Below are positions 11,219-49,635 of a stretch of 64,000 nt of DNA, piece after piece. The notes beneath the pieces are model-generated. The model saw only the letters and a program-made list of their open reading frames with translations. It did not search any database and was not told where the DNA came from. The DNA is taken from the IMG/VR virus record IMGVR_UViG_3300020473_001965, positions 124,001-188,000 of that record; one strand, 5' to 3'. How positions within the stretch are numbered: the first letter of the stretch is position 1; the number at the start of each line of letters is the position of its first letter. A program made the position numbers and the translations under genes.

Positions 11219-12601
11219 TCACTTTATTCCTAGTCTAGATGACCACTTAACCCTTATGCGGTCAATCATGGCTTCTATATCCTTTGCAACAAATCCTTTG
11301 GCTGCAGCCCTGTCTCTTATTGTACTCATGTCAACTGATAATAGTTCAGACGGATCCTGGCCGGTTCTTCTAGCTCTTCCTAAAATTCCTGCGCTGTGTC
11401 CGCGGACTTCTGCGTCGCAACCATAGTATTTTTCAATATTTTTTATGCTGTCCCACCGTGTTGTTGGATCTCCACAGTCATCACTTGATAGAGTTTCTGT
11501 ATCGTCGCAACTATGTTGAATTTCATGAGATAACGCATCTGCTAACTCGGCGGACAGCCAGTCTTGAAAACCTTCAATTGTCGGATATGATCTTGGAATA
11601 TCTAGTGTCAACACAAGATTAGACTTTGATCGATCTTCAATCACACAGACGTAAGCAGCCTCTACGTTGGCAGAGCCGTCATCGGTGACTGCTATGCCTA
11701 AGTGTACTTCATTGATGTTTTTAAATTCGTCAAATATGCTTGTGGGTAAAACAAGCGTCGCTTCAACTCCAGCCGATAATTTTTGAAGCTCATCAAACGT
11801 GCTTCTCGTAAAAAGAAAAGAAAATATGGCGTCTTCTAAATCATCAACGTATTGAGTCATATCAGGATCACCTGATGCTGCTTCTATCAAAAGGCCTCTT
11901 ACATACTCTCTTATGATTGATTCGTTCATAGCATCCTTTCCCCATGACGAATGAGAAAGCCATGCACGCTGTGTTTCTTCAGCTTCTTTTCGTGTCATCT
12001 TTCGCGCCTTTACCTGATTATCTAAATATATCGACATCAACTCTTTTACTGGTCGGCCAGTAGCATATGATTCTCCCCGGAAGCCAACGACAAATGCTGG
12101 AACCTCACAAGACGAAGTAAAATAATGAAACGCACTCTTTGAAGATGAGTTCGTCAAAGGGCAAGAAACTCTTTGAAAAGGTTGATCTTTCTGAGTCAGG
12201 TGGTGCATCTCATGTGGCACAACATTGTACAACTCGATTCTTAGTTTTTCAAGTACTTCAGAATCACCTAGTTTTTCTGGTGACAACTGAATGTCTATGT
12301 CGATTCTTGCTTCGGAGCTCTCAGTGAAACCTGCCTCACCATCGATATTCCACCCTGGATGACCTTCATCAAACTGATCAGTTCTTACTTTTACTTCTAT
12401 CTCATACAGGGCATACCCGACATCTTCCCACAAATCAAACCAAACGTCAGGGTCGATTGGGTAGTCCCAGACATATTGAAACGTTTTTTGACCTGGCTTT
12501 TTTAGCTTTGAAATAAAGCTCAGAATGTCTTTGATGACAGGGGCTGCAGCGTCTTGATAAAAGAAATCTTCTTGATCGAGACCTATTACTCGAGATTCCA
12601 T
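11219..12601 (-). CDS. Protein with two tandem HExxH (zincin-like) domains
   Basis: HEMHH..Q...CEVPA in domain 1 and HEIQH...AEVRG in domain 2, joined by MNESIIREYVRGLLIE. Likely start ATG at 12601 (GAGGG RBS). Confidence 0.65.
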   Translation of the reverse strand: MESRVIGLDQEDFFYQDAAAPVIKDILSFISKLKKPGQKTFQYVWDYPIDPDVWFDLWEDVGYALYEIEVKVRTDQFDEGHPGWNIDGEAGFTESSEARIDIDIQLSPEKLGDSEVLEKLRIELYNVVPHEMHHLTQKDQPFQRVSCPLTNSSSKSAFHYFTSSCEVPAFVVGFRGESYATGRPVKELMSIYLDNQVKARKMTRKEAEETQRAWLSHSSWGKDAMNESIIREYVRGLLIEAASGDPDMTQYVDDLEDAIFSFLFTRSTFDELQKLSAGVEATLVLPTSIFDEFKNINEVHLGIAVTDDGSANVEAAYVCVIEDRSKSNLVLTLDIPRSYPTIEGFQDWLSAELADALSHEIQHSCDDTETLSSDDCGDPTTRWDSIKNIEKYYGCDAEVRGHSAGILGRARRTGQDPSELLSVDMSTIRDRAAAKGFVAKDIEAMIDRIRVKWSSRLGIK

Positions 12602-12636
12602 AACTGCACCCTCACATAGCAATAAATATCACGCTA

Positions 12637-13611
12637 CTAGTAATAATCTGTCAGGTCAACACCCTTTTCTTTTGCGTCATTAAGGTGAATCAGGGGGTCA
12701 TAAGTGCCTGAATCGGACGTGATTGTTCGCAAACTTGAAGCGATCCCAGACTCCAAAGTAATGTAAGGTCGCCACCCTGAGGCTTCTCTAAACTTTGCAC
12801 TAGACAGAATATGATTGCCCAGATAATCCGTTTCAGGGTGCCACTTGATTATGCTGGAAACATCTTTCCCCACTATGCTTGAAAGCATCTCAACAATGCC
12901 CCCGGTGTTATAAGGCGTTTCAGCAGCTACATTATAATCAGCTCCAAACATACCCTTGACACAACTCATGAAGACTGCATTACAAAAATCAGAGACATGC
13001 ATGTAGTCCTTAGTCTTGTTAGGATTTAAAAACATGTCAAGCGAATTAACGTCATTAAGAGCTGAGTATATTGTCTTTGCTATCAAAGAGTTCATGTCGC
13101 CGGCGCCGCCGTATGCAAAAAGAGGTCGCATAATCACCCAGTCTCGAGCTGTGCTTCTTACGATCTGTTCTCCGGCTAGCTTCTGAACGCCATAAAAAGT
13201 TCTAGGGTTTAGGTCTGAATCCTCGAAGATTGGTCTGTCTTGATACTTTTCTGTATCATAGATTACTGTGGTACCCATATAACAAACTGGGACGTTTGCT
13301 TTTCTTGCCGCCCTTGCAATATTATGTGTCCCCATCACGTTACTAAGAGAAGAATCCTCAGCATTCAGTGCGACGACATCTGTTCCAACAACAGCGGCGT
13401 TATGAACGATTACATCGATACCTCTATTTGAAAGAACACTCGACCATACATCTTCAGTGTTTCCCCACACACAAGGTTCGTTTGTCTTGTGTCGTCTAAC
13501 AGCCAGATCCTCATCATCCATTAGTGAAACAAATTCATGATCAGTCGTTTGTATCAATCTCCCTAGATTGTCTCCGATGAATCCGCGTTCGCCTGTAATT
13601 GCAATTTTCAT
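12637..13611 (-). CDS. NAD-dependent NDP-sugar epimerase/dehydratase/reductase (second extended SDR)
   Basis: ITGERGFIG, HNAA, NVMGT, YGVQK, KDYMHV.D. The ATG at 13611 overlaps the upstream TGA. Confidence 0.85.
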   Translation of the reverse strand: MKIAITGERGFIGDNLGRLIQTTDHEFVSLMDDEDLAVRRHKTNEPCVWGNTEDVWSSVLSNRGIDVIVHNAAVVGTDVVALNAEDSSLSNVMGTHNIARAARKANVPVCYMGTTVIYDTEKYQDRPIFEDSDLNPRTFYGVQKLAGEQIVRSTARDWVIMRPLFAYGGAGDMNSLIAKTIYSALNDVNSLDMFLNPNKTKDYMHVSDFCNAVFMSCVKGMFGADYNVAAETPYNTGGIVEMLSSIVGKDVSSIIKWHPETDYLGNHILSSAKFREASGWRPYITLESGIASSLRTITSDSGTYDPLIHLNDAKEKGVDLTDYY

Positions 13612-13871
13612 ATACTTGAAATCCTCTCTATGATTGCCAAAGACCACGTATTAGAATTTGGGCTTGGCACATAATCGTATAGCACATGAGGTGCTACTTC
13701 ATCATACGTGTCTAGCTCAAAATTTTCTATTAGATAGACGATTCCTTTTGTGGCCTTGCTGGCTTTTTTGTTTGAGTAATCTTTTTCACATGCCTCTTTG
13801 GCAAGATCTAGATGTGAATACACACCTATTGATTCATTCTTTTCTAAGATAACTCTGCTGACTAAAAACAT
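13608..13871 (-). CDS. Hypothetical protein
   Basis: ORF with AGGG RBS, translationally coupled to the downstream SDR; IGVYS..LA motif common in small phage proteins. Confidence 0.55.
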   Translation of the reverse strand: MFLVSRVILEKNESIGVYSHLDLAKEACEKDYSNKKASKATKGIVYLIENFELDTYDEVAPHVLYDYVPSPNSNTWSLAIIERISSI

Positions 13872-13913
13872 TTGTGTTCCCTTGTTTAAAGATACTCAGC
13901 AATTCTATTTTTT

Positions 13914-14477
13914 TTAAGTTAATCTAAATTCTTTTAAAATATTTTTAATGTACGAAAATAGCAAGCCTTCATTTACAAGATGCGACACAACTTTAACATT
14001 ATCGCTTTTTAGTTGTTCAATCGCAACAATGTTATTTGGACTATCTTCCCAGAGATATACTACGTCGGCATTTAGTTTCTCAACATATTCAAGAGCCTTG
14101 ACATACTTGGCTCGAGGATCGGAACTTCCTACTGCTTCGATTTTTGGCATAGGATTGACGCCATAATCAGAAAGAAACTTTGCAACAGGAGCTGGATTCG
14201 CCCTTGCAGTCAATACTATAACTCTTTCCGACCCATGCTGTTTTAAAGCACTTTCCATTTTTGACCATACAGACTTAATAATAGAAGCGTCAGGTGGATA
14301 GACATCAAACTCAGCAAAGTCAAGAACATCACCTGGCTGACTTAGAGATCGTTCATAATCTCTATACTGTCTAGAGGTTACGTACTCTGTCTCACCTGAC
14401 TTTCTATTAATGATCACTTTAGCGCCTGAGTCTACTAAGGTGTCATCAAAATCAAATATGTAAAATGGGCTTTCCAT
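13914..14477 (-). CDS. HAD-superfamily phosphatase
   Basis: IFDFDDTL (motif I), VLTAR (II), K (III), WEDSPNN (IV). Confidence 0.8.
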   Translation of the reverse strand: MESPFYIFDFDDTLVDSGAKVIINRKSGETEYVTSRQYRDYERSLSQPGDVLDFAEFDVYPPDASIIKSVWSKMESALKQHGSERVIVLTARANPAPVAKFLSDYGVNPMPKIEAVGSSDPRAKYVKALEYVEKLNADVVYLWEDSPNNIVAIEQLKSDNVKVVSHLVNEGLLFSYIKNILKEFRLT

Positions 14478-14522
14478 GAAATAACTACTTACCAAAAGAT
14501 AAGTATGTATTTGATTGATTAT

Positions 14523-14972
14523 TTACTCGATCTCTTGATCATAAGGTTCTTCAATCAAATAACCAGTCGAATGAACTCTGTCCAAATAATCTTCAAGTTG
14601 CTCAAAAGTTGTACATACCTTTATACCGCTTCTTGCTAGCATCAAGTTAAACTTTGCCCCTTCTGGGAGGCCTTGACAAAAGTACACGATCGGAACATTC
14701 TTAGCGTAGGCATAGCCGGCTTCCCATATGGTTCCGATATCCTTGTCTCTAGTATTGACAATCAAGAAATCTGATGTTTCGATATGATACAAGTTCCCTG
14801 CGAAGGTTTCATCCTGGGTCTCTTTTGGTGCATTCGGAGGGCAAACAAAAATCTTTCTTGGGCTTGCAAGGTCGATCCACTTTCGACTCTCACAAATCTC
14901 TTCAAGCCTTGTTAGCTCTTCTGCTTGAGTAGGATTGAACCACCCAGATGCCAAATAAATCTTCTTTTCCAT
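14523..14972 (-). CDS. Nucleoside 2-deoxyribosyltransferase / nucleotide N-hydrolase (NDT, DNPH1/Rcl, MilB family)
   Basis: KIYLASGWF, D.GTIWEAGYAYA (catalytic Glu), FNLML. Confidence 0.85.
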   Translation of the reverse strand: MEKKIYLASGWFNPTQAEELTRLEEICESRKWIDLASPRKIFVCPPNAPKETQDETFAGNLYHIETSDFLIVNTRDKDIGTIWEAGYAYAKNVPIVYFCQGLPEGAKFNLMLARSGIKVCTTFEQLEDYLDRVHSTGYLIEEPYDQEIE

Positions 14973-14974
14973 TT

Positions 14975-16773: not shown

Positions 16774-17577
16774 CTATGATTGTCTTTTTGGTGACCAAAA
16801 TGTTGATCTTCCGTCTTTAGTTTTTTCTTTCACAACTTCGTTGCCATCTAGATCAACTTTTCTATTATATACTAAAAACTTTGATCCGTATTCCCCTAAA
16901 TTTCCATCAAATTGCTTATATGATTTAAGCGTCGCACCGCCAGATTGAAAACTTGTGACCATTACTTCTCTAACAGCATCGTTGAGCTTCACCAACTCCC
17001 GGTCTGAGATTTCTTCAACCTTTCTATGAGGTGAAATCTCTGCTAGCCAAAGTGCATCAGACTTTATATAATTTCCAACACCAGCGACAACAGACTGGTC
17101 CATTAAAGCTTGTACGACTAGCTTGGCATCTTGTGTCCTCATCTGTTGAACAAATAAGTGGTCCGGACATTTTTCGCTTAATAGATCTGGCCCTAATGAC
17201 TTTAACTTTTCAATCAATGGCTGGGGACCTTTTACAAACTTCATTGTTCCAAAATTTCTAATATCATTGTAGTATATCATTTCATCATCAACTACAAACT
17301 TAAATCTTGTATGCTTGTTAGGGTGGATTGACCACTCGCCTGTCATTCCTAGTGTTGACCAAATTGACCAGGTCCCTTCTAAGAGCCAGTACATAAACTT
17401 ACCGTGAACTCCTGTCCCAAGAACATGTAGCGGTAATTCTTCTTCAAATATATCAGCACCATCCGGAGATTTCTTTGTGTACCTCCCAGAGACAACTGAT
17501 ACTGAATTCAAAGTTTTTCCCGTCACTGCCCTTGAAAGATCTAATGCATATCTTCTTACTTCTGGTCCTTCTGGCAT
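16774..17577 (-). CDS. Fpg/Nei family DNA glycosylase/AP lyase (Nei-type, zincless finger)
   Basis: N-terminal MPEGPEV, HGK, LGMTG, D.RNFG, LGPD, LMDQ..VAGVGNYI (H2TH), C-terminal GRSTFW without Cys ligands. Confidence 0.92.
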   Translation of the reverse strand: MPEGPEVRRYALDLSRAVTGKTLNSVSVVSGRYTKKSPDGADIFEEELPLHVLGTGVHGKFMYWLLEGTWSIWSTLGMTGEWSIHPNKHTRFKFVVDDEMIYYNDIRNFGTMKFVKGPQPLIEKLKSLGPDLLSEKCPDHLFVQQMRTQDAKLVVQALMDQSVVAGVGNYIKSDALWLAEISPHRKVEEISDRELVKLNDAVREVMVTSFQSGGATLKSYKQFDGNLGEYGSKFLVYNRKVDLDGNEVVKEKTKDGRSTFWSPKRQS

Positions 17578-17603
17578 TTTTGAACTTTATCTCCTACTTG
17601 TGT

Positions 17604-17632
17604 ATTATATAGAATGTAGGGCTTTTGTTCAA
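17604..17632 (-). promoter_or_regulatory. sigma70-like promoter for the nei-like operon
   Basis: TTGAAC-N17-TATAAT followed by an AGGAG RBS. Confidence 0.75.
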
Positions 17633-18304
17633 ATGAATCGAATCATTATATCTGACACACATATCGGTACTAAATTTTATAGATCAAAAGCACTTCTCAA
17701 ATTCTTGCAAGAAAATCTCCATAAGTACGATGAACTAATCTTAGCAGGAGATATTATTGATTTTATTAAAATCCCTGTGTTTACAGAGCGCTGTCTTGAA
17801 ATATTGGAAAAAGCTCAGTCAGCAAAAAGAATTGTTTACGTCGTTGGAAATCATGATGAATCTCTAGTCGGTGTTATCGGAAAAAAAGTAATGGGGGTTG
17901 AGTTTGTCAAGAGATATGAGTTCGAAGAAGATGGTAGAAAGTTTAGAGTAGAGCATGGTGATGCTTATGACAAAGGCGTTCTTCATAACCGAATCTTTGT
18001 CAAGTTTCTTTCCGTCATTCAAAACATGCTTGAGTTTACATTTAACTTTGACTTCACATCTTGGTGGACAGCAATTCAGATTAAAAAGCACAAGCTAAGA
18101 TCGATTATTCATATCCTTAGGCACAATCCGAAAATCGATGTCTTTATTATGGGTCACACACACATACCCGAAGCTTTAATCTGGGTTGATGAAGATCAGA
18201 ATATAAAAACCTACATTAACTCAGGCGACTGGGTCACTCACCAGACCTATGTTACCATTGAAGAGGGGGTTGCGAGACTTAGGAAGTTCGAAGATCAGGA
18301 GTAG
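17633..18304 (+). CDS. Calcineurin-like metallophosphoesterase (LpxH / UDP-2,3-diacylglucosamine hydrolase-like)
   Basis: ISDTHIG, GDIID, GNHD, EHGD, MGHTH, NSGDW. The real start is probably the ATG at 17633. Confidence 0.85.
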   Translation: MNRIIISDTHIGTKFYRSKALLKFLQENLHKYDELILAGDIIDFIKIPVFTERCLEILEKAQSAKRIVYVVGNHDESLVGVIGKKVMGVEFVKRYEFEEDGRKFRVEHGDAYDKGVLHNRIFVKFLSVIQNMLEFTFNFDFTSWWTAIQIKKHKLRSIIHILRHNPKIDVFIMGHTHIPEALIWVDEDQNIKTYINSGDWVTHQTYVTIEEGVARLRKFEDQE

Positions 18305-39334: not shown

Positions 39335-40273
39335 TCAGTCTATATTATACATCGGTGAACTTTTTACCTCGTCTAAAAGAGTAGGAAGATCAAGACCAGC
39401 ACAATCAATTTTCGTTTTGATAAAGTTGTAGTGGTTGCAGACTCCATGAAACTCTCCTCGCTCACAATCTCTGTGAACACTTGTCTCTATGTAACCCTTG
39501 TCATTTTTAGGATATTCAAGAGGAATCCCTATTCCTATGTGACATGCCTTCCAAAGCGCTTTAAGTGCTTCGAGCTGAACTGGATAAAAATCTGTAAAGG
39601 GCTTCAATGTTTTTCCATGAACATATCCATGCTCTTGAACAGGCCTTTCGCCGAAACCATTCTTGACGTACCAAGACTGATACTTTAGATAATATGCATT
39701 TGCTATTTCTACCCCTATGCCTTTCGTGTTTCCGCCTTCGTACTTTGGTATACCTGCGTGCCACGCCTTATGTTGTGTATCTAGCATTTGATAAATTGTT
39801 CCATTATTATCAATCAGGAAATGAACTGATATCCCACGACGATTTAAGACTTTTGCGCAAGATTCAGAGCTCAAGCATACATCCCAGTGGTTGACGAACA
39901 TGGTTGGCTCTCTATCTGGTTTTCCTGAATAATCTGTATAGCAGCCCTTGTTCGCTTTAAAGCCTTCGTCTTCATCCCATAAAATAACCTTGTCCCACTC
40001 AATTGGAATAAATTTTCCGTTATGAACGATGTGTTTATCACCAGGTGTATACAGATTCTTCTTTGGCTTGTGATCTGAGATGCTTGATTCTCTCTCGGTC
40101 CATATTCTTCTGTAAGTTGTGGGACCTACGAGACCGTCTGCTTTTAATCCATTAGCTCTCTGCCACTTTTGGACTGCTTTGACAAGATTGTGATCAAATT
40201 CGTCGCAACCAAACCATGATGGCTCCCATTCAAGCTTTGAAGCACTTGAACTGTTATAGAAGTCTTTATCCAT
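39335..40273 (-). CDS. Endolysin: peptidoglycan-binding domain plus N-acetylmuramoyl-L-alanine amidase (Amidase_2)
   Basis: AVQKWQRANGLKADGLVGPTT (PG_binding_1); NHWD, SVHFLIDNNGTIYQ, AWHAG, GVEI, NHY...KIDC (Zn amidase). Start ATG at 40273. Confidence 0.88.
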   Translation of the reverse strand: MDKDFYNSSSASKLEWEPSWFGCDEFDHNLVKAVQKWQRANGLKADGLVGPTTYRRIWTERESSISDHKPKKNLYTPGDKHIVHNGKFIPIEWDKVILWDEDEGFKANKGCYTDYSGKPDREPTMFVNHWDVCLSSESCAKVLNRRGISVHFLIDNNGTIYQMLDTQHKAWHAGIPKYEGGNTKGIGVEIANAYYLKYQSWYVKNGFGERPVQEHGYVHGKTLKPFTDFYPVQLEALKALWKACHIGIGIPLEYPKNDKGYIETSVHRDCERGEFHGVCNHYNFIKTKIDCAGLDLPTLLDEVKSSPMYNID

Positions 40274-40520
40274 TTTTCTTCCTCTTTTTCTCTCTTTCGT
40301 ATTCGTCGATATGAAACAAGACAGTTGAGGCCCAGGTCCTGTCACTGTCTTTTTCTCTTTCACTTAAATCTGAGTACTCTGTCTGGAGTTGCTTTCGCCA
40401 CCTCTCAACATTCTCAGGTGTGTAGTTGTCCAACATGTATCTAGTCCAATGGGCCCACTGGCGATGTTCTAGGTCAGCTAATATTTCTAGCAAATCGCGG
40501 CGGGAAGCATTGTCAATCAT
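40266..40520 (-). CDS. Small RyR-domain-like phage protein
   Basis: LADLEH.QW..W...Y.DLSEREKDSDR matches the RyR repeat pattern. Confidence 0.55.
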   Translation of the reverse strand: MIDNASRRDLLEILADLEHRQWAHWTRYMLDNYTPENVERWRKQLQTEYSDLSEREKDSDRTWASTVLFHIDEYEREKKRKKNG

Positions 40521-40521
40521 T

Positions 40522-41124
40522 TCAATCTAGCTCGATATCTACGTTTATCTCAATAGATAGCTTTGGAACCCTAAGCTGATTAGCCATTCCGTGCTTTTTC
40601 GCTTCTTCTGCATCCAAAAACCAGTCAGCATGCTTTTTCTTATCGACGATCTTCATAAAATAGTCGTCTTTCTTACCGCAATTTCGCGCCATCATTGTAT
40701 AAATCTTTTCATTAAGTCTGTCAGCTTCAGCAGCTCCGGCTTTTAATTCTTCAACTTTTCCCATATCCATAGAAGATACATCGTGTATCATAACAGTAGC
40801 GTTAGGATCCATAAATCTCAACCCTTCTTCTCCAAAGGAAAACAAAACAGCTCCACATGACATTGCTTTGCCTTCAACTATTGTAGCTACTGGAAGGTCC
40901 GCATGCTTTATTGCACTAATCATACTCATCAAGCTATACACTTGACCACCGTACGAATCAATAATAATCGGAATTACCTTTTGTCCCGTATTGTGTGCCA
41001 ACCCCATTTGTTCATCAAACTTTTTAGCTGAATCTTCGTTAAATTTGTTTACCCTTATTATTACAGGGCTTTTTCTTAGTTCCACTTCTTTGATTAATGG
41101 TGAAACATTGCTCGTCCAAATCAT
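40522..41124 (-). CDS. clpP: ClpP-like serine protease
   Basis: IDSYGGQV, GKAMSCGA (Ser), MIHD (His), DWFLDAEEAKKHG. Confidence 0.85.
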   Translation of the reverse strand: MIWTSNVSPLIKEVELRKSPVIIRVNKFNEDSAKKFDEQMGLAHNTGQKVIPIIIDSYGGQVYSLMSMISAIKHADLPVATIVEGKAMSCGAVLFSFGEEGLRFMDPNATVMIHDVSSMDMGKVEELKAGAAEADRLNEKIYTMMARNCGKKDDYFMKIVDKKKHADWFLDAEEAKKHGMANQLRVPKLSIEINVDIELD

Positions 41125-41145
41125 TTTGTACCTCTTTGAATTTAT

Positions 41146-43647
41146 TTATCCGCACTTAGCATAACCACAATTCAAGCAAGTGGCGCAGCCTTCTTGGTAA
41201 ACTATATTAGGATTGTCACAACATTGTGTGTCAATGACACCGCTGCCTGGTTTTGTACCGTCTAATATATATTTCTTTAAGCATCTTGCAATTACTTTTG
41301 AGAAGCTAAATAAGTCTGCATCTCTATCTTTTTGTAGTTGTTCACAAATATAATGAACTGGTGCGCCATGGCGTAATGCCAGTGATAGTGTTCTTGTAAA
41401 AGCTGAATGGTTGGGATTGTCAAAGATCTTGACAATGTCTTTCACAATCACTTCATTTCCATCTTCTCCAAATTTTAAATCGTAGATTGAGTTCATTGTC
41501 TTTCTTGGTCGCTTTATAAGATGACCACTTTTGTATTTTCTTGGGATTTCAACATACTCAGATTTACCTCCGAAAATTTCGTAAGGTTTACCTTCAAGAA
41601 GGCCGATCAAAATAGTCCATGGTTCTCCAGCAATCGATGCCTGATGTACATCACACTCAAGCTCTTTTAGCCTCTTTGGCGCTGAATTCTCATTAAAGAC
41701 AAGTTTCTCTTCTGGGTTGGCATCAGAGGAAACTAATACACCGGCGCGACTGCCGTCGCGATAAACAGTCACACCCTTGCACCCAAGTTCCCAGCCGGTC
41801 ATGTATACATCTTTGACGGTTTCGACATCGATGTCAGACGGCAAGTTTGTTGTGTTTGAAATTGCATGACATACCCATTTTTGAGCTGCTGCTTGCATTC
41901 TTACTTTTGCAACCCAATCTATTTCATTTGCAGTCGAACATTTATAGGGGCTTAAATCCACTAACTCATCAGGGTCATCATCGCTCTGAAATACAGATTG
42001 TTCGATCCACTGTTTAAAACCATGGTGATAGACTGTGTACTCTTGCCACTTGTCACCCGAATCATCAACAAAGTCCACACGGGCGTCTGCGTCTTGTCCT
42101 GTCAGCTTCTTCCGTCGTGTATAGTGAAGCATAAATGCTGGCTCGATACCCGAAGTTGTCTGAGTCAATACAGAAACAGATCCTGCTGGCGCTGTTGTAG
42201 TATTTGCGATGTTTCTTCGACCGTATTTCACATAATCTTCTTGGCGATGGGGTAAAAGCTCGCCTATGATTCTTGATATGAAAGGATGATCCTTTTCTTT
42301 GTCATAATCCCAAGCTCCAAATGATCCTCTTTCTTTTGCAAGAATGATCGATGACTCATAAGAATTTAGCGAAAGCCACTTATAAACTTCTTCTGTTATT
42401 TCAACAGACTCGTCTGATCCATACTTTACACCTATCATCGCGAGCATATCACCCAGACCTGTAATCCCTAGACCTGTGCGTCTGCCCAGCACTGCTTGTG
42501 TCTTTATATTTTCCCAAAGATCAAGCTCAATTTGCTTAACTGTGTGGGGTTCGGGATCATTCTTAATTTTTGAGATGATTTTATTGACTTGATCTATTTC
42601 AAGATCGATCATATCGTCCATAAGTCGCTGCGCTTTTTGAACTTTTCTAGCAAACTCGCCATAATCAAATTCAGCAGAATCTGACCACGGGTTCGTTACA
42701 AAAGCAGTCAAATTCATCAACATTAGTCTACAAGAATCATATGGGGAAAGTATGATTTCTCCACATGGGTTTGTAGATGTTGAACCAAAGCCTTCAGCTT
42801 CATAAGCATCAGAAGGAGTCATTGTCTTTGCTGTGTCCCAAAAAAGGACCCCGGGTTCAGCTGAAGAGTGGGCAGACTCAATAAGTGCATGCCAAATTTC
42901 TTGTGCGCTATCTGTGACTGTCACCTCAGGTTTGTCTGAATCGACAGGCCACTTTAAAGTAACATCGTCACATGCCTTCACAGCGTTCATAAACTCATCA
43001 GTTACACGGACAGAAATATTAGCACCTGTCACTCTGGTCAAGTCCCTCTTAATCTTTATAAAGTCACGAATCTGGGGGTGGTGGACTGAAATAGTTAACA
43101 TTAGAGCCCCTCTGCGCCCTCCCTGTGCTACTTCTCGACATGAGTTGCTGAATCTATCCATGAAGACTTCAATGCCATCTGTCGTCCTTGCAGCATTCCC
43201 TGTCGTCATTCCCTTAGGTCGAATGTTTGAAATATCAAATCCCACGCCGCCGCGGCGCTTGGCAATCTGAACAAGTTCTTGATCAGTCTTCAAGATACCG
43301 CCGTAAGAGTCATAGGGAGATTCGATCACAAAGCAGTTTGAAATAGACTGTATTTGATTATCATTACCTATTCCTGCCATGGGTGAACCTTGTGGCACTA
43401 TGTATTTAAAATCTTTTAAGAGGCTGTAGATTTCGTCTTCAGGCATTGGGTTGGGATATTTTGACTCTGCCTTATAATACTCGCGGGCGAGGCGCCTGTG
43501 CATATCATCCGGTGTTGTTTCTTGATAGTCACCTAATCTATTTGTCAAGGCATACTTTGTTACAAAAACATTAGCAGCCAACTCATCTCCCTTAAAATAC
43601 TCAAGAGAGTTTTTAAAAGCGACACTGTATCCTAATTTCTCGTCCAT
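41146..43647 (-). CDS. nrdJ: Class II (adenosylcobalamin-dependent) ribonucleotide reductase
   Basis: SNCFV, RRGGVG, GGRRGALM, NISV, TNPCGEI, C.L, GLGITG, TAPAGSVS, SGIEP, KGVTVYRDGSR, C-terminal Cys cluster; no tyrosine pair and no beta subunit gene nearby. Confidence 0.92.
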   Translation of the reverse strand: MDEKLGYSVAFKNSLEYFKGDELAANVFVTKYALTNRLGDYQETTPDDMHRRLAREYYKAESKYPNPMPEDEIYSLLKDFKYIVPQGSPMAGIGNDNQIQSISNCFVIESPYDSYGGILKTDQELVQIAKRRGGVGFDISNIRPKGMTTGNAARTTDGIEVFMDRFSNSCREVAQGGRRGALMLTISVHHPQIRDFIKIKRDLTRVTGANISVRVTDEFMNAVKACDDVTLKWPVDSDKPEVTVTDSAQEIWHALIESAHSSAEPGVLFWDTAKTMTPSDAYEAEGFGSTSTNPCGEIILSPYDSCRLMLMNLTAFVTNPWSDSAEFDYGEFARKVQKAQRLMDDMIDLEIDQVNKIISKIKNDPEPHTVKQIELDLWENIKTQAVLGRRTGLGITGLGDMLAMIGVKYGSDESVEITEEVYKWLSLNSYESSIILAKERGSFGAWDYDKEKDHPFISRIIGELLPHRQEDYVKYGRRNIANTTTAPAGSVSVLTQTTSGIEPAFMLHYTRRKKLTGQDADARVDFVDDSGDKWQEYTVYHHGFKQWIEQSVFQSDDDPDELVDLSPYKCSTANEIDWVAKVRMQAAAQKWVCHAISNTTNLPSDIDVETVKDVYMTGWELGCKGVTVYRDGSRAGVLVSSDANPEEKLVFNENSAPKRLKELECDVHQASIAGEPWTILIGLLEGKPYEIFGGKSEYVEIPRKYKSGHLIKRPRKTMNSIYDLKFGEDGNEVIVKDIVKIFDNPNHSAFTRTLSLALRHGAPVHYICEQLQKDRDADLFSFSKVIARCLKKYILDGTKPGSGVIDTQCCDNPNIVYQEGCATCLNCGYAKCG

Positions 43648-43655
43648 ATCTACCC

Positions 43656-45059
43656 CTACTGATCTTGCTGTACTTCTTTCCACTTAGTCTTCAACAGTGA
43701 TTTCATTGTTGCAGCATCATTCTTAGCGACTTCTCTTAAGTCTAAATCTTCTTCATCCAGGACCTTTATTTTAGATCTTGCTGTGTCCATTTGAATAGGA
43801 AAGAGAAGACCATCTCTTCCTGCACGATTCTTTGCGACAAAAAGTCGACCTGCACCTGTTGACTTTTCCAGTGGCTTTCGAGAGAGCGATATAACAACAT
43901 CAGCAACCATTGCTTTTCCATATGCCTCTGACATATTTTCAAGTCCGACGATGTCTGATTTTGCTGAGTCTCTGTTAGCTTGTGATGCTGTCCAAATCGG
44001 TATGTTTATTTCCATCGCAAGATTTCTTAGCTCTTCATAAATTAATTTCAACTCATGACGAAGCGAGTCGTAAGACTTGGATGACCGCATGATATCAGCG
44101 TAATCAATAACAATAAGGCTGGGCATGAAAGATTTTAGCTTCAGCTTCTCTATATGGTTCCTGATTGTCTGGACTGTCGCAGCACCTGTTGGATATTCTT
44201 TTATTATCAATCTTCCCAACTCCATTCCCTCGTATTTTGATAGTACTCTGTCTTTGTTGTCTTGTACCTCATTACTAGGAATATCACATAAATTTGAATC
44301 GTACCTCAAACCGACTGCTGTTTCGGTTAGCTCAAATGTATAGTGAACAACGTTCTTACCTCGTCGAAGTGCGTTTGCTCCCATAGCTACCAAAAAGTGA
44401 CTCTTGCCTACACCTGTATTTGCAGTAACAACCCCTATTTCACCCCTGCCCAAGCCACCATTTAGAATATCTTTTCGATCTAATTCAAGTATTCCAGTTG
44501 GGCAGACGCGTCGATTAACTTTTACAAATCTCGCCTCAATGTCTTCAAAGAAATCGTGCCCAGTAGATGATGGCATGCCGACTGAAACTGCTTCTTTCAT
44601 TATTGTCAAGACATTTTCAAATTGACCGTCATGAATAAGATTTACTGAATTTTCCAATGCTTCTTTAAAAGCTTGACGCTTACAAAAATCAAGTGCCTTG
44701 TCTTTAACATATGAAAGGTCACCATTATCAGGGTTAGATTTTACTCTATGAAGATACTCGACAATTTGTTCTCTTAAGACAGCGTCATTACCCTGTGTTA
44801 GATCTTCTCTTATTATGCTTACTAGCAATCCCAGTGTTGGAAAGCACCTATATTTTTTGTGATAGTTAAAATATTTTTCTGTCAAGTAATTTAGATATTT
44901 TATCTCAAAAAAAGACGGGTCCATCACCTCGATCATCTGTGCTGCCCATGTATCATCATGCAAGAGACCTTGAAAGATCTTTTCTTGAAAAGATTTGCCA
45001 TACTGCTTGAAATGGCCTTCGTGCGGTTGTGTAGCTTTCTTGTCACTAGCAAGACTCAT
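43656..45059 (-). CDS. Replicative DNA helicase (DnaB / T4 gp41-like)
   Basis: ANTGVGKS, TFEL, IIKEYPTG, IDYADIM, WTASQANR, KNRAG. Confidence 0.92.
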   Translation of the reverse strand: MSLASDKKATQPHEGHFKQYGKSFQEKIFQGLLHDDTWAAQMIEVMDPSFFEIKYLNYLTEKYFNYHKKYRCFPTLGLLVSIIREDLTQGNDAVLREQIVEYLHRVKSNPDNGDLSYVKDKALDFCKRQAFKEALENSVNLIHDGQFENVLTIMKEAVSVGMPSSTGHDFFEDIEARFVKVNRRVCPTGILELDRKDILNGGLGRGEIGVVTANTGVGKSHFLVAMGANALRRGKNVVHYTFELTETAVGLRYDSNLCDIPSNEVQDNKDRVLSKYEGMELGRLIIKEYPTGAATVQTIRNHIEKLKLKSFMPSLIVIDYADIMRSSKSYDSLRHELKLIYEELRNLAMEINIPIWTASQANRDSAKSDIVGLENMSEAYGKAMVADVVISLSRKPLEKSTGAGRLFVAKNRAGRDGLLFPIQMDTARSKIKVLDEEDLDLREVAKNDAATMKSLLKTKWKEVQQDQ

Positions 45060-45060
45060 C

Positions 45061-46014
45061 TCAACTCCTGATCGAAAAATTTAATGATAAAAAAAGAGCG
45101 TCTACATCAAACGTGTGTAGACCTTCTCTAGATAGCATTCTCATCACAGCTATCTTATTGCGACTGGGTTCAAAAGTATTAATGGCACCCTGTATTTTTT
45201 GAATTTGTGTTGCTGCTAAATTTGCTGTACCTAAATGCATAAGTTTCCAATTTCGCCTTGCAATATCTTCGCCTTCATCAATTCTTTTAAAAATTTTTGC
45301 CTTAGATTTAGCTTGACGAATCTTGCTCGAATTAAGTATGTCTTCAATACTGACAAATTCTGGGTTTGTCAGTTCTGGAAATTGGTTCACTAGTACCTTA
45401 AAACCTACACCTTTTATTCCTGGGACTCCGTCAGAAGTATCTCCACAAAATGATCTTGCTTGACAAAAATTATTTGGATGAATCTTAAATCTTTCCAAGA
45501 CATCATCGACCTTTATGTATTTTTTGCTAGTAGGAGAAAAGACTTCGACTCGATCAGAAATGAGCTGATAGTAGTCCTTGTCAGAAGAGTATATCACACA
45601 CTTCTTGTCTGTGAACATTGTTTTTGACATATACCCGATTGCGTCATCAGCTTCACAGTCGGATACATAAATTTGACATACTGGTGTGTGTTTCAACACA
45701 TTGACAAGAAATGCAACCTGGCCATTCCTATTTGAAACTGTATCGGGTATTTCGGCATAAAAACGATTTAATCGCTGGGGTCTTCTGTTCTTTTTATAGT
45801 CTGGAAATATTTTTCTTCTTCTAGCTGAGCCGCCTCCTTCCCAAATTATATAAACTTGTTCCGGAAATATTTCAGCAACTATGTTCTTGAGCCCATTTAA
45901 AAAGCCTACAACACCACCGATAGGTTCTCCGTGACGATCTAGGGTTGGATTTGCACAAAAATGACGAGTAAAAACATTATAGGCATCTATTAGAAGAACT
46001 GTGTTTGAACTCAT
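45061..46014 (-). CDS. 5'-3' exonuclease / flap endonuclease (T4 RNase H-like)
   Basis: LIDAYN, YKKNR, EADDAI, SSDKDYYQL, GDTSDGVPGIKGVG.K. Confidence 0.92.
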   Translation of the reverse strand: MSSNTVLLIDAYNVFTRHFCANPTLDRHGEPIGGVVGFLNGLKNIVAEIFPEQVYIIWEGGGSARRRKIFPDYKKNRRPQRLNRFYAEIPDTVSNRNGQVAFLVNVLKHTPVCQIYVSDCEADDAIGYMSKTMFTDKKCVIYSSDKDYYQLISDRVEVFSPTSKKYIKVDDVLERFKIHPNNFCQARSFCGDTSDGVPGIKGVGFKVLVNQFPELTNPEFVSIEDILNSSKIRQAKSKAKIFKRIDEGEDIARRNWKLMHLGTANLAATQIQKIQGAINTFEPSRNKIAVMRMLSREGLHTFDVDALFLSLNFSIRS

Positions 46015-46015
46015 T

Positions 46016-47194
46016 CTACATTTCTGCCTCGAGAGCTATAGACCGAATCTCTTCGTAAGATTCAGGATCAATTTCTAACTCATCGTTTTTCATCTTTTTA
46101 ACCATAGCTACTTCGAGCAAATCATCAATATAGTGCGAATAATCTGGGTTTTTCATTATCTCACCAAACTTTGGTTTATGAAATTTCTTTTCCACCAAAA
46201 TCTCACCTGTGACTACATCTGTCACTGTCAAACATTTCCAAGAACCCGTACCAGAAAGACAAACTTCTTTCCCGTTTATTGTTTCGGCGCCGTGTTTTCG
46301 TAACAAATCAAACACTTGCTCATGCTCTTTGATTCCGACGCCAAAATGAATTTCAAAGTCAATCTTTCTGAAAGGGGGAGCGACTTTATTTTTAATAGTC
46401 TTTGCTGAGACGTGAATTCCTACTACATCATCTCCGTCCTTTATTTGTTGACCGGCTCCAAGTTTTATTCTAGTTGAAGAATGAAATGGGATAGCTTTTC
46501 CACCGGGTGTGGTGTCTGGGTCTCCGTACATCACCCCTATTTTTGTACGAATTTGATTAAGAATGACAAACAGGACATTCTGGTTCGCTATGACACCTGT
46601 AATCTTTCTCATACCCTTAGAGATCGCTCGCGCTTGGAGACCTATAGACTCCTTATCATAGTCGCCAAGAAGCTCTGCTTTTGGTGAAGAAGCTGCAACA
46701 GAGTCCCAAACAATGGTTACGGGTATGTCTTTGTCCATTGCTTTTGCCTTCATGATCGTGGCTTCAGCGATTGATAACACCTCTTCAGTACAGTGCGTAT
46801 CAACGTATACGAATCTCTTAGATACATCGACGCCTAGCATACCCAGGTTCTCAACAGAGGTTGCGTTCTCGGTATCAATATAAACTACAATTCCACCCAG
46901 ACGTTGCGTAGTTCTTGCGATCTGGGTGGCTATGTGCGACTTTCCAATTGACGGTGGGCCAAAGATCTCTACGATCCTACCCTCAGGAAGACCCCCATCT
47001 CTTCTGTTAGAACAAATATAATCTAACAATCTAGAGCCGGTAGAAATCCACCTGTTGACATGCGTAGGAGATTCATCATACGCAAGGTTGTAAGCGACTC
47101 TTTCTCCCAACTCTTTGTTGAGCGAGTCAATTAAATCAGCAGTAAAATCTTCTTTATTAGATTGGTTACTAGATATTGTCTTCTTTTTTCCCAT
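46016..47194 (-). CDS. recA: RecA/UvsX recombinase
   Basis: ISTGS..LD, GLPEGRIVEIFGPPSIGKS, YIDTE, WDSVAA, NQIR, TPGGKAIPFHSS.R, KNKVAPPF. Confidence 0.93.
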   Translation of the reverse strand: MGKKKTISSNQSNKEDFTADLIDSLNKELGERVAYNLAYDESPTHVNRWISTGSRLLDYICSNRRDGGLPEGRIVEIFGPPSIGKSHIATQIARTTQRLGGIVVYIDTENATSVENLGMLGVDVSKRFVYVDTHCTEEVLSIAEATIMKAKAMDKDIPVTIVWDSVAASSPKAELLGDYDKESIGLQARAISKGMRKITGVIANQNVLFVILNQIRTKIGVMYGDPDTTPGGKAIPFHSSTRIKLGAGQQIKDGDDVVGIHVSAKTIKNKVAPPFRKIDFEIHFGVGIKEHEQVFDLLRKHGAETINGKEVCLSGTGSWKCLTVTDVVTGEILVEKKFHKPKFGEIMKNPDYSHYIDDLLEVAMVKKMKNDELEIDPESYEEIRSIALEAEM

Positions 47195-47211
47195 TGTTAC
47201 CTCGTATTTAG

Positions 47212-47241
47212 ATAGTAATGCGCTAGATACAAAGTGTTCAT
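47212..47241 (-). promoter_or_regulatory. Possible sigma70-like promoter for the recA-exo-helicase-nrdJ operon
   Basis: ATGAAC-N18-TACTAT immediately after the terminator. Confidence 0.5.
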
Positions 47242-47244
47242 ATT

Positions 47245-47274
47245 AAAAAAGGGCGAAACAAAGTTCGCCCTTTT
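47245..47274 (-). terminator. Rho-independent terminator after the SSB gene
   Basis: AAAA-GGGCGAA-CTTTGT-TTCGCCC-TTTTTT. Confidence 0.88.
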
Positions 47275-47296
47275 AAAACTCAATCTAATTTTCTAT

Positions 47297-48076
47297 CTAC
47301 ATAGACTCAAGATCAGCAAAAGCATCATCAAGAGACTTGTAGCTATCTCCAGACTTTTCAGTTGAACCAGTTGAGGTAGTGGTATTACCTGCGCCTTCGG
47401 TGCCAACATCATCGGCAGAGTCGTCGCCATTCAACCAGTCGTTAACAATCTTTTCTAGTTCATCATACGACTTAAGTGTAAAGAGTTCATCAAGATCTGG
47501 AATGGTCTTTACCCACTCTGCTGCCTGGCTGTCATCAGAAGAAAGTGCTGTACCCTTTCCTCGAGGACGAACTTCAGTCATAGCCCACATCCGACCCGGG
47601 GGCTTGTTGCACACAACCTTTACATCACGGCCGTCATGTGGGTCTGTAATGTCTCCGTAGTCCTCATCAAGCATGATGTTGAGAAGAGACTGATAAACAG
47701 TCTTTCCGAAGGCCCAAAGGCGTACACCCTTATCTTCTTCCCCTCGAACGATGACAGGAGCATAGGTCCTCATCTTAGGGTATAGCTTCTTTGCTAGCTC
47801 ATACGATTCCTTAGAACCGTCGTCACGAAGCTTAGTGATAAGCTCCTGGATGGGGTCAGGCTTTCCAAACTGGTATGGTGCCAAAAGACCCGGGTTATTT
47901 CCAATATTGTAGTAGAAATAACGCTCCTTGAAAGGTTGACCATCATTATCTTGGAAGGATAGCAAGCGAACTGTGTGTTCTTCGCCTTCTTGCGGCCGCC
48001 ACATCGTGTTTCGCTTTGAATTGTTACCAGAAAGCTGTCCCAGCTTCTTTCGAATTGCATCTAAATCAATTGCCAT
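47297..48076 (-). CDS. Single-stranded DNA-binding protein (T4 gp32-like)
   Basis: W.P.EG...VRL, PF.E, G..DPI, GVRLW.FGK, DYGDITD...GRD, acidic tail LDDAFADL; adjacent to recA. Confidence 0.85.
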   Translation of the reverse strand: MAIDLDAIRKKLGQLSGNNSKRNTMWRPQEGEEHTVRLLSFQDNDGQPFKERYFYYNIGNNPGLLAPYQFGKPDPIQELITKLRDDGSKESYELAKKLYPKMRTYAPVIVRGEEDKGVRLWAFGKTVYQSLLNIMLDEDYGDITDPHDGRDVKVVCNKPPGRMWAMTEVRPRGKGTALSSDDSQAAEWVKTIPDLDELFTLKSYDELEKIVNDWLNGDDSADDVGTEGAGNTTTSTGSTEKSGDSYKSLDDAFADLESM

Positions 48077-48128
48077 TTTTTATCTCCTTAATGTTTAATG
48101 TGCAAATGTCCAATTACTTGGCTTGTAT

Positions 48129-48157
48129 AAAGTACTGTGTGTGTATTAGTTGTTCAA
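48129..48157 (-). promoter_or_regulatory. sigma70-like promoter for SSB
   Basis: TTGAAC-N17-TACTTT. Confidence 0.65.
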
Positions 48158-48161
48158 ATAT

Positions 48162-48755
48162 TTATTTGTTTGTCTTGCGACTTTTTTTGCCCTTTTTTCT
48201 CTTACCGGGCATGTAAGGTTTTGCTCCTCCGAAGCCGCTGCCGGCTGCGGCGGCAGGAGTTCTTCTCTTTCTCCCATGGGATGGTGGTGATTGGCCGAGG
48301 GGCAGAGTCACCCCTCTGATTGTTCCTCTAGAAGCGCCGCCTCCTCCACCCATACCAATTGCATTTATTTCTTCTACTTCATCTTCTTCTTCGAGTTCAT
48401 CTTCATCAATAATGTCTTCGCCGTCTTCAGACTCTGCTTTCTTGGTCGGTCCCGGGTATGCGGGAGGTGTATGAGGAGGCTCTAAAGACAGTGTTCCTCC
48501 TTCTAGCAAGATATGCCTAACATATTCTCTAATCAAACCCTCTTCCATTGTTTCCTCCAACTCCTCATCGTAGCATTCAAATGAATCTTCATCGCATTCA
48601 GGATCGTAAAAACCCGCTAAAGGTGTACTGGTTTTTCTTGAGAAATCAGTTGATGCATAAGAAGAAGGATCGCCTACTTGACCTGTCAGGGTTGGTGACT
48701 TAATTCTTCCAGATGCATAACCGGGTGCTATATGAAATTCAGCTGATTTTGGCAT
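48162..48755 (-). CDS. Low-complexity hypothetical protein (acidic centre, basic C-terminus), probably an internal head protein
   Basis: EEGLIREYVRHILLE motif, E/D-rich tract, GVTLPLG, Lys/Arg tail. Confidence 0.6.
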   Translation of the reverse strand: MPKSAEFHIAPGYASGRIKSPTLTGQVGDPSSYASTDFSRKTSTPLAGFYDPECDEDSFECYDEELEETMEEGLIREYVRHILLEGGTLSLEPPHTPPAYPGPTKKAESEDGEDIIDEDELEEEDEVEEINAIGMGGGGGASRGTIRGVTLPLGQSPPSHGRKRRTPAAAAGSGFGGAKPYMPGKRKKGKKSRKTNK

Positions 48756-48775
48756 GTATATACATATTCTCTACA

Positions 48776-49357
48776 TTACCCTTTTAATACAGCAGTCAGC
48801 CTGATAGCGTTATTTAAAGCCACAGACAAAATGGGCTGTCCGTTATGATAGAACTTAGACTCATCTGCCAGAGCACCTGAGCTTAAGAGGACTGCTAGCC
48901 ATTCATTCTTTGAAAGATTTATTCCCAAATGATTTAGCAGCCAGAGCGATCGATGTTCAACTGTCATTTTTTCAAGCTTTTCATTAAACTTAAAATGTTG
49001 ACCTAGTTTTTCCTGGTGCCACTTGGATGTCTCTTTGACAAAAAGGTCATGTTCGGTGTCCCCTACCTTTCCTATTGCATGAAACAACGATACTGTTATC
49101 ATCTCGTCAGACGTCAAGCCCAAATTGTGTGCTTCGTTTTCTCTCCTTAAGTGATTTAAGACACTCAAAGAATACTCTATGAGACCTCCTTGATAGGCCC
49201 AGCCCTGCTCTTCCCTGCAATTAAACGGGCACAAAGCAAGGCGCTCTCCAAGTGCCTCAATAAAAAGCTCATAAGACTCAGACCTCTCTGAAACTTTCTG
49301 ACTTAACTTATAGAATAATTCAAAATTGGACTGAATTTTTTCTGTTGGTAAACTCAT
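48776..49357 (-). CDS. HD-domain-like protein with degenerate metal ligands
   Basis: YQGGLIEYSL.V and LFHAIGKVG (compare Y.GGL.EHSL.V and L.HD.GK), RSL.LL...GI.L...E..A. Confidence 0.65.
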   Translation of the reverse strand: MSLPTEKIQSNFELFYKLSQKVSERSESYELFIEALGERLALCPFNCREEQGWAYQGGLIEYSLSVLNHLRRENEAHNLGLTSDEMITVSLFHAIGKVGDTEHDLFVKETSKWHQEKLGQHFKFNEKLEKMTVEHRSLWLLNHLGINLSKNEWLAVLLSSGALADESKFYHNGQPILSVALNNAIRLTAVLKG

Positions 49358-49374
49358 TCATCATCTCCTGGTAA

Positions 49375-49403
49375 ATCATACACCAAGAGAGTCGATTTTA
49401 CAA
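49375..49403 (-). promoter_or_regulatory. sigma70-like promoter
   Basis: TTGTAA-N17-TATGAT followed by AGGAG. Confidence 0.7.
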
Positions 49404-49404
49404 A

Positions 49405-49635
49405 TTAATCTAAGTTTTTAAGCTCTGATAGAACGAAGTTACGAAGCTTTTCGGCTGTAAAAGTCTCAATGAGGTCTTCTTCGTGATCCTTGTTGTAGTG
49501 TAGATTTTCTCCACCTGACCACGCGTCTTCTTTAGCCTTGACATCTTCTGGTTTGTCTTTGTCGATTGCTAAGCCTGTTGCCTTCTTCATTTCTTCAATT
49601 ATGATTCTTTTAAGATCACTCTTCTTGATTCTCAT
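49405..49635 (-). CDS. Small hypothetical protein, probably head-associated
   Basis: MRIKKSDLKRIIIEE and EKLRNFVLSEL amphipathic motifs; GAGGAG RBS; upstream ATAATTA. Confidence 0.6.
   Translation of the reverse strand: MRIKKSDLKRIIIEEMKKATGLAIDKDKPEDVKAKEDAWSGGENLHYNKDHEEDLIETFTAEKLRNFVLSELKNLD

What the first reader, a model, noticed from the sequence alone, without database searches (positions are those of the whole stretch)
11882..49635. Recurrent E-x-[LI]-[LI]-R-x-Y-[VI]-[RK]-x-[LI]-L-x-E tag on unrelated proteins
The tag is seen in the tandem protease (ESIIREYVRGLLIE, 11882-11929), the HAD phosphatase C-terminus (EGLLFSYIKNILKE, 13929-13970) and 48162..48755 (EGLIREYVRHILLE, 48501-48545). 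It appears more loosely in 49405..49635 (SDLKRIIIEE; EKLRNFVLSE) and 1..746 (ESLADLLFE). Every one of these genes has ATANTTA or a one-off variant just upstream. T4-type prohead proteases cleave after [LI]-x-E (established). Inference: a portable capsid-targeting/maturation signal that loads enzymes into the head.
Basis: partly seen in the sequence, partly recalled or inferred. Interest (0 to 1): 0.62.

Follow-up and report, generated by a model that had tools for sequence, protein, structure and literature searches.

The report
Portable N-terminal tag on phage enzymes
An uncultured marine T4-like jumbo phage and its relatives put the same ~14-residue helical tag, which ends in the cut site of the T4-type head protease, on a dozen unrelated enzymes; the tag most likely marks them for loading into the capsid, but no virion data exist.

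Summary
The recurring peptide is real and far beyond chance. A profile trained only on tags from other phages scores six proteins of this 236-kb genome at 6.6-14.2 bits. Reversed decoys reach at most 2.4 bits; shuffled decoys average 3.8 and peak at 7.5. Conservation is in the peptide, not the DNA.

In relatives the tag sits at residue 2-4 of separate genes. One 290-kb contig has about nine consecutive tagged genes. In fused proteins the tag sits at every domain junction. An actinophage homologue of one cargo domain lacks it.

The genome has a T4-type head: gp23 capsid protein, S77 gp21 protease, scaffold and portal. Of 56 tags, 53 end in [LIVMF]-x-E. The AlphaFold2 model shows a detached, low-confidence helix. 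Small head-module proteins have similar N-termini. ATANTTA is a real promoter-like motif that heads the tail sheath, tail tube, adaptor, tape-measure and scaffold genes but not the replication genes, and it sits directly upstream of 5 of 9 tagged genes.

The best reading is a T4 CTS-like targeting and cleavage signal (confidence 0.5). This is circumstantial, because no proteomics exist. The "protease" label on the tandem HExxH protein is unverified.

The parts
11882..11929 (-). Strong tag copy at the start of the second HExxH module of the fused protein. It begins with an in-frame ATG preceded by a GAAAGGA Shine-Dalgarno-like site.
   Evidence: orthologous single-module proteins start with the tag at residue 1-3
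11219..12601 (-). 460-aa protein (ATG start) made of two diverged HExxH modules joined by the tag. Its function is unknown and the protease label is unverified.
   Evidence: in relative L007 the two modules are separate genes with other tagged modules between them
13929..13970 (-). Degenerate tag at the C-terminal end of the HAD-type phosphatase. It is a positional homologue of the junction tag in HAD_SAK_1 fusion proteins.
   Evidence: alignment A4
13914..14477 (-). HAD-type phosphatase gene (ATG start), related to HAD_SAK_1 and polynucleotide-kinase-type phosphatases.
48501..48545 (-). Strong internal tag copy (residues 71-85) in an acidic/basic, low-complexity 197-aa protein.
   Evidence: conserved in five related contigs
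48162..48755 (-). 197-aa tagged protein between the gp32-like SSB gene and an HD-like gene. It shows weak similarity to the head-module protein p200.
49405..49635 (-). 76-aa protein whose N-terminal helix ends in I-x-E-E. It is not a profile match to the tag, but it is homologous to a 100-aa head-module protein of a related phage.
3..746 (-). N-terminal 248 residues of a 912-aa protein. The C-terminus (outside the window) carries the scaffold's terminal motif.
12623..12629 (-). ATATTTA promoter-like motif 21 nt upstream of the ATG of the tandem HExxH gene.
14500..14506 (-). ATACTTA promoter-like motif 22 nt upstream of the HAD ATG.
49661..49667 (-). ATAATTA promoter-like motif upstream of the 76-aa gene.
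779..785 (-). ATAATTA promoter-like motif upstream of the 912-aa gene.

Best explanation
The tag is a lineage-specific counterpart of the T4 capsid targeting sequence. It is a short amphipathic N-terminal helix with the consensus M-N-L-L-R-E-Y-I-R-x-L-L-x-E, followed by a flexible linker.

Inferred mechanism: the helix docks the attached protein onto the scaffold core of the assembling prohead, and the gp21-family (S77) prohead protease then clips it off after the terminal Glu. The cargo stays inside the head and can be delivered with the DNA. In fused proteins the internal tags would act as cut sites that release the separate modules. The repeated tag-coding sequence also looks like a recombination junction that shuffles cargo modules.

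Shown: the tag's reality, portability, position, terminal [LIVMF]-x-E, detached-helix model, T4-type head genes and late-type promoter association.

Inferred: docking, cleavage, packaging and ejection.
For: - The genome encodes the gp23 capsid protein and a Peptidase_S77 protease (95 bits), with a scaffold, portal and terminase in T4 order.
- Of 56 distinct tags, 39 start within the first 10 residues, and 53 have [LIVMF]-x-E ending at tag position 11-13. The background rate in random 9-mers is 13%. Half are followed by S, A or G.
- In the AF2 model the domain is confident, but tag residues 1-20 form a helix at pLDDT 44-54 that is not packed on the domain.
- One cargo domain exists with the tag in this lineage and without it in a mycobacteriophage.
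- The cargoes are unrelated: HExxH modules, RNase_T, PolyA_pol, HD_4+NUDIX, a phrog_8582 domain and several unknown domains.
- Small proteins between the protease and scaffold genes have related, highly conserved N-termini. The p157 family is invariant over 17 residues in 7 phages, and hhalign against the tag gives P about 0.001.
- ATANTTA heads the tail sheath (two copies), tail tube, adaptor, tape-measure and scaffold genes, but not DnaE, PolA, RecA, gp32 or RNR. It lies directly upstream of 5 of 9 tagged genes (Fisher P = 0.008), and two more sit in an operon that it heads.
- Literature: T4 CTSs are 10-19-residue N-terminal propeptides cut by gp21 after L/I-x-E. They are the only conserved part of otherwise diverse internal proteins (PMC9026906, PMC3012670, PMC5694885).
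Against: - No virion proteome, N-terminome or transcript data exist for this uncultured marine phage, and no RNA run holds it.
- The tag is longer and more conserved than a cut site needs.
- I did not test the tag for similarity to the T4 CTS itself.
- Some copies are internal or C-terminal.
- The identifiable cargoes are cytoplasmic RNA- and nucleotide-processing enzymes, whose mutual fusions could equally reflect a soluble complex.
- The similarity to head-module N-termini is only suggestive (hhalign probability 22%).
- The protease-tag complex prediction gave no verdict.
Confidence: 0.5

Rival explanations
1. The tag is a docking or oligomerisation helix. It bundles with other tags, or binds a common hub, so that separately encoded RNA-end-healing and nucleotide-processing enzymes work as one cytoplasmic complex. 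This would be a 'Swiss-army-knife' assembled in trans.
For: - The identifiable cargoes are functionally coherent: HAD_SAK_1, RNase_T, PolyA_pol, NUDIX, HD and a nucleotidyltransferase.
- They are found fused to each other in varying orders, with the tag at each junction.
- The hydrophobic i, i+1, i+4, i+5 spacing suits helix-helix packing (read directly from the sequences).
Against: This reading does not explain several observations:
- the near-invariant terminal [LIVMF]-x-E
- the strict placement at residue 2-4 in separate genes
- the late-type promoter association
- the resemblance to head-module N-termini

Many cargoes have no recognisable link to RNA.
Confidence: 0.2
2. The tag has no targeting function of its own. 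It is a conserved linker or module boundary that persists because recombination between tag-coding repeats keeps shuffling and fusing modules.
For: The 460-aa fusion in the window corresponds to a deletion between the first and third tags of the arrangement in relative L007. Different lineages carry different module orders between tags.
Against: Synonymous sites differ freely between copies. Codon identity at identical residues is 49% in the L023 array, and Leu and Arg codons vary in G000. Selection therefore acts on the peptide. The tag was added to a domain that exists without it elsewhere.
Confidence: 0.1
3. The tag is a degradation or processing signal for a different protease. Candidates are the phage ClpP-like protease (window 40522-41124) acting with a host unfoldase, or the HExxH modules themselves.
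For: A CLP_protease domain gene is present. HExxH modules are the commonest cargo.
Against: Amphipathic helices ending in a conserved Glu are not typical Clp degrons (my own knowledge). The HExxH module matches no peptidase family or fold. Nothing links either enzyme to the tag.
Confidence: 0.08
4. The copies are chance amphipathic helices, or a DNA- or RNA-level repeat read through in frame.
Against: The strong copies exceed every decoy. They are conserved in orthologues across contigs and diverge at synonymous sites.
Confidence: 0.01

Closest known systems
T4 capsid targeting sequences (CTS) of internal proteins IPI-III and Alt
   Same: - It is a short N-terminal propeptide-like segment ending in L/I-x-E.
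- It sits on otherwise unrelated proteins.
- The phage has a gp21-family protease and a scaffold core.
- Tagged genes occur in arrays and are scattered outside the head module.
   Different: - The sequence is a different, longer (12-15 residue) and strongly conserved helix.
- The cargoes are mostly enzymes of 150-550 residues rather than small basic proteins.
- There are about 9 or more tagged proteins per genome.
- Tags also sit at internal junctions of fused proteins.
- Cleavage and packaging have not been shown.
Long N-terminal propeptides of phiKZ/SPN3US head and ejection proteins
   Same: Both involve a jumbo phage, a diverged S77/S80-type protease cutting after Glu, and many packaged proteins with conserved N-termini among paralogues (PMC5694885).
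   Different: Those propeptides are over 100 residues long with S/A-x-E sites, and the lineage is different. Here there is one short shared tag ending in a hydrophobic-x-E site.
Encapsulin cargo-loading peptides
   Same: Conceptually similar: a short portable peptide addresses unrelated enzymes to an HK97-fold shell (my own knowledge).
   Different: Encapsulin peptides are usually C-terminal, are not cleaved, and bind the shell protein. No encapsulin is involved here.

Membership tests
T4-type capsid targeting sequence | N-terminal propeptide of about 10-19 residues | tested here: met
   39 of 56 distinct tags start within the first 10 residues. The tag core spans 12-15 residues.
T4-type capsid targeting sequence | Ends in the gp21 cleavage motif L/I-x-E | tested here: met
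   53 of 56 tags have [LIVMF]-x-E ending at tag position 11-13, against a 13% background.
T4-type capsid targeting sequence | Phage encodes a gp21-family prohead protease and a scaffold core | tested here: met
   PF03420 scores 95 bits at genome 207383-207802. A gp22-like scaffold and the gp23 capsid protein lie adjacent.
T4-type capsid targeting sequence | Only the tag is shared among otherwise unrelated cargo proteins | tested here: met
   Cargoes include HExxH, RNase_T, PolyA_pol, HD_4+NUDIX, phrog_8582 and unknown domains. An actinophage homologue lacks the tag.
T4-type capsid targeting sequence | Sequence relatedness to the T4 IPIII/IPII CTS | not tested
   No T4 sequence was fetched. From memory the two differ, so common function rather than homology is claimed.
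T4-type capsid targeting sequence | Directs protein into the prohead and is removed by the protease | not testable with these tools
   No virion or N-terminome data exist. Complex prediction of the protease with a tagged N-terminus gave no verdict.
   Two HExxH motifs are present and conserved (alignment A3). There was no Pfam or PHROG hit, no Foldseek match at E<=0.001, and VIA-align Z<=6.6 on the helical tail only.
HAD_SAK_1 phosphatase (PF10307) | Match to the family model, or clear homology to members | tested here: inconclusive
   The window protein matches only PF00702, below its cutoff (16.8 vs 26.4 bits), and phrog_415 at 1.6e-11. It aligns at 29-31% identity with PF10307-bearing proteins, including the DxD motif.

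The most novel reading that the evidence does not exclude
A marine lineage of T4-like jumbo phages runs an expandable cargo system. A single 14-residue address helix, clipped by the S77 prohead protease, loads a dozen or more enzymes into the capsid for co-injection. The cargoes include RNA-end-healing and nucleotide-processing activities and unknown HExxH modules. The tag-coding repeat doubles as the recombination junction through which new cargo modules are acquired, fused and split. If so, the packaged 'ejectome' of uncultured phages could be read from sequence alone.
Probability: 0.4. Interest if true: 0.75.

Novelty: new variant of a known kind. Interest (0 to 1): 0.6.

Why it matters
If the tag is a capsid address label, packaged and ejected proteins of an abundant uncultured marine phage group could be predicted from sequence alone. 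Near-identical DNA appears in marine metagenomes from at least five studies.

It would extend the T4 CTS principle from small anti-restriction proteins to a large enzyme toolkit. It would also offer a short, natural, cleavable tag for loading proteins into T4-type capsids.

If the tag is instead a docking helix, it would define a new way for phages to assemble multi-enzyme machines from separately encoded parts.

Either outcome can be tested with one protease, one tag and one reporter.

Tried and rejected
- **DNA search of window 40000-52000 against the phage collection:** no match.
- **tblastn of the tandem HExxH protein against phages:** no match.
- **Tag profile against LR756508, Microcystis phage Mel-JY01 and Flavobacterium phage immuto:** nothing found. 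These are the closest records by capsid protein, so no cultured phage with proteomics carries the tag.
- **Tag profile against 1.84 billion representative proteins:** only 8 hits at E<=0.001, and two of those are eukaryote-like repeat proteins that I discarded as junk. A 14-residue motif cannot reach significance more widely, so the breadth of the tag family is underestimated.
- **Complex prediction of the S77 protease with residues 1-45 of the tagged 189-aa protein:** no verdict (score 0.01). This counts neither for nor against binding.
- **Fold searches of the HExxH module (Foldseek PDB and VIA-align wide):** no convincing match.
- **Search for RNA runs:** none holds the stretch.
- **DNA- or RNA-level repeat as the cause:** rejected because synonymous sites differ.
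- **Chance:** rejected for the strong copies.
- **A loose N-terminal hydrophobic-pattern-x-E regex:** only 2.2-fold enriched at N-termini, which is too weak to use.
- No contig looked human, and no restricted step arose.
Full report
**Context**

The window is bases 124001-188000 of a single 235,672-bp IMG/VR virus record, estimated 87% complete. GC content is 42.6%, and almost every gene lies on the minus strand. Near-identical DNA occurs in marine and marine-plankton metagenomes from at least five studies. No RNA run holds it.

The genome encodes a T4-type head module outside the window, at 196-213 kb. It contains the gp23 capsid protein (PF07068, 218 bits), a gp21-family Peptidase_S77 prohead protease (PF03420, 95 bits), a long acidic scaffold-like protein, a portal and a large terminase. 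By capsid protein, the closest public phages are an uncultured 484-kb phage, Microcystis phage Mel-JY01 and Flavobacterium immuto phages, at 35-46% identity.

The window itself carries replication and nucleotide-metabolism genes: DnaE, a PolA-like polymerase, RecA, a gp32-like SSB, DnaB, FEN, RNR, ThyX, TK and dCMP deaminase. It also carries a ClpP-like protease, an amidase and several very large structural-looking ORFs.

The two strong copies in the window have a third equal outside it, at the N-terminus of a 189-aa protein (genome 23618-24187).

To avoid circularity I built a profile from 20 tags taken only from other phages' proteins and scanned this proteome:

| Protein | Score (bits) |
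|---|---|
| 197-aa protein | 14.2 |
| Tandem HExxH protein | 13.3 |
| 189-aa protein | 10.8 |
| 200-aa head-module protein | 8.9 |
| N-terminus of a 497-aa protein | 6.9 |
| N-terminus of an HD_4+NUDIX protein | 6.6 |
| Best reversed decoy | 2.4 |
| Shuffled decoys, top score | mean 3.8, maximum 7.5 |

The HAD C-terminal copy scores only 1.3. In an alignment with HAD_SAK_1-type homologues, however, it falls exactly on their junction tag, so it is a decayed true copy. The 76-aa protein and the peptide in gene 1..746 cannot be told from chance as tag copies.

The copies differ at synonymous sites, so the peptide is what is conserved, not a nucleotide element.

**How far does it go?**

Orthologues of the second HExxH module are mostly about 234-aa proteins that begin with the tag at residue 1-3. 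Other architectures place the tag at every junction:
- HAD_SAK_1 - tag - HExxH
- tag - an extra domain with two H-x-T motifs - HExxH
- HExxH - tag - domain - tag - RNase_T exonuclease
- NUDIX - tag - domain - tag - a further domain

In a related 49-kb contig, the two HExxH modules that are fused in the window are separate. A tagged exonuclease module and a tagged 161-aa gene lie between them. The window's fusion therefore looks like a deletion between two tag-coding repeats.

A 290-kb ENA contig has about nine consecutive, overlapping genes whose called starts are followed at once by the tag. One of them is a PolyA_pol-family enzyme.

The 189-aa protein's domain (phrog_8582) occurs in mycobacteriophages without the tag. 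The tag is therefore truly portable.

It is also narrow in distribution. An exhaustive profile search of 1.84 billion representatives gave only six credible hits, all of this kind. The nearest cultured phages lack it.

**What it looks like**

Among 56 distinct tags, 39 begin within the first ten residues. Fifty-three have [LIVMF]-x-E ending at tag position 11-13, against 13% for random 9-mers of this proteome. The next residue is S, A or G in half of them.

An AlphaFold2 model of tag plus HExxH module (mean pLDDT 88) shows a confident domain. Residues 1-20 form a helix at pLDDT 44-54 with a disordered linker, so the helix is not part of the fold.

**Link to the head**

Between the protease and scaffold genes lie small proteins with related N-termini. 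The p157 family keeps an invariant 17-residue N-terminal segment across seven phages that are otherwise only 33-40% identical. hhalign aligns this segment to the tag in the expected register (P about 0.001, probability 22%, so suggestive only).

The 200-aa protein in the same cluster starts with a tag variant and is weakly similar to the window's 197-aa protein (E = 0.005).

The window's 76-aa protein is homologous (E = 5e-6) to a 100-aa protein inside the head module of a 205-kb relative.

**Promoters**

ATANTTA in the sense orientation is strongly enriched 7-60 nt upstream of genes (45 observed against 5.2 expected) and has no -35-like partner. It heads both tail-sheath paralogues, the tail tube, a head-tail adaptor, the tape-measure-like gene and the scaffold. 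It is absent before DnaE, PolA, RecA, gp32 and RNR. That pattern fits a T4-style late promoter, but this is an inference.

It lies directly upstream of 5 of 9 tagged genes, against 17% of all genes (Fisher P = 0.008). Two more tagged genes sit in an operon that it heads. It is not specific to tagged genes, and near-matches carry no information.

**Interpretation**

Published work on T4 shows three relevant things (PMC9026906, PMC3012670, PMC5694885):
- Internal proteins and Alt carry 10-19-residue N-terminal CTSs that bind the scaffold core.
- gp21 removes them by cutting after L/I-x-E.
- The CTS is the only conserved part of an otherwise diverse set of packaged proteins.

Every feature I could test matches this template, so I take a CTS-like address and cleavage signal as the best explanation (0.5). 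It remains circumstantial. There are no virion, cleavage or expression data, and the single complex prediction gave no verdict.

The main rival (0.2) is a docking helix that assembles RNA- and nucleotide-processing enzymes into a complex. It explains the fusions and the functional coherence. It does not explain the terminal Glu motif, the strict N-terminal placement, the promoter class or the head-module look-alikes. Lesser rivals are a functionless recombination junction, and a signal for ClpP or for the HExxH modules.

**Novelty**

No Pfam or PHROG model covers the tag, and full-text searches found no description of it. I rate it a new variant of a known kind, namely CTS-type targeting, with a much larger and more enzymatic cargo set than in T4.

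Noticed in passing
genome 122008-122050 (C-terminus of the gene whose start is window 3-746); genome 203317-203350; genome 206407-206450: A C-terminal motif of the form R-W-x-T-L-A-G-L ends both the scaffold protein and the 912-aa protein. A W-A-x-L-A-F variant ends the p157 family. These are the only three W-x-x-L-A-[GFA] sites in the proteome, and scaffold C-termini of relatives keep the motif. It may be a second, C-terminal prohead-binding signal.
   Followed up: partly
genome 204955-205203 (outside the window); L025 5110-5337: An 82-aa ribosomal-protein-S21-like gene (PF01165, 23.4 bits, below the 27-bit cutoff) sits inside the head module between the protease and the scaffold. Microcystis phage Mel-JY01 has an annotated S21 gene in the same position.
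   Followed up: partly
window 40522-41124: A ClpP-like protease gene (PF00574, E = 3e-27) lies next to an amidase/peptidoglycan-binding lysis gene (39335-40363). It is present in addition to the T4-type prohead protease.
   Followed up: no
window 11219-12601 compared with L007 846-3714: The fused two-module HExxH protein corresponds to a deletion between the first and third of three tag-coding repeats seen in a related contig. This suggests the tag sequence acts as a recombination junction.
   Followed up: partly
window 17477-18304 (+): This is the only convincing plus-strand gene in the window. It encodes a calcineurin-like metallophosphoesterase (PF12850, E = 4e-12).
   Followed up: no
window 6235-9765 and 49687-50895: The phage carries both a full DnaE-type Pol III alpha and a short (402-aa) family-A polymerase fragment-like gene. 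It also has bacterial-type RecA, a gp32-like SSB, DnaB and FEN.
   Followed up: no
window 26587-35313, 35314-39243, 50926-54378, 54674-57823, 21682-24822: Five ORFs of 1046-2908 aa have essentially no Pfam or PHROG match. The 1543-aa ORF at 58099-62730 resembles tape-measure proteins, and the ORF at 63326-63982 is a T4 baseplate protein.
   Followed up: no
genome 189302-192769 and 192812-195994 (outside the window): Two adjacent tail-sheath paralogues exceed 1000 aa. Each is preceded by the ATANTTA motif.
   Followed up: no
L023 2789-10705: Within the array of tagged genes the Tyr-Ile pair is almost always encoded TAC ATA, while Leu and Arg codons vary freely. Overall codon identity at identical residues is 49%. 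This is unexplained.
   Followed up: no
genome 114348-114656 (outside the window): A 102-aa protein has a further weak N-terminal tag-like segment and an ATAGTTA motif 23 nt upstream.
   Followed up: no
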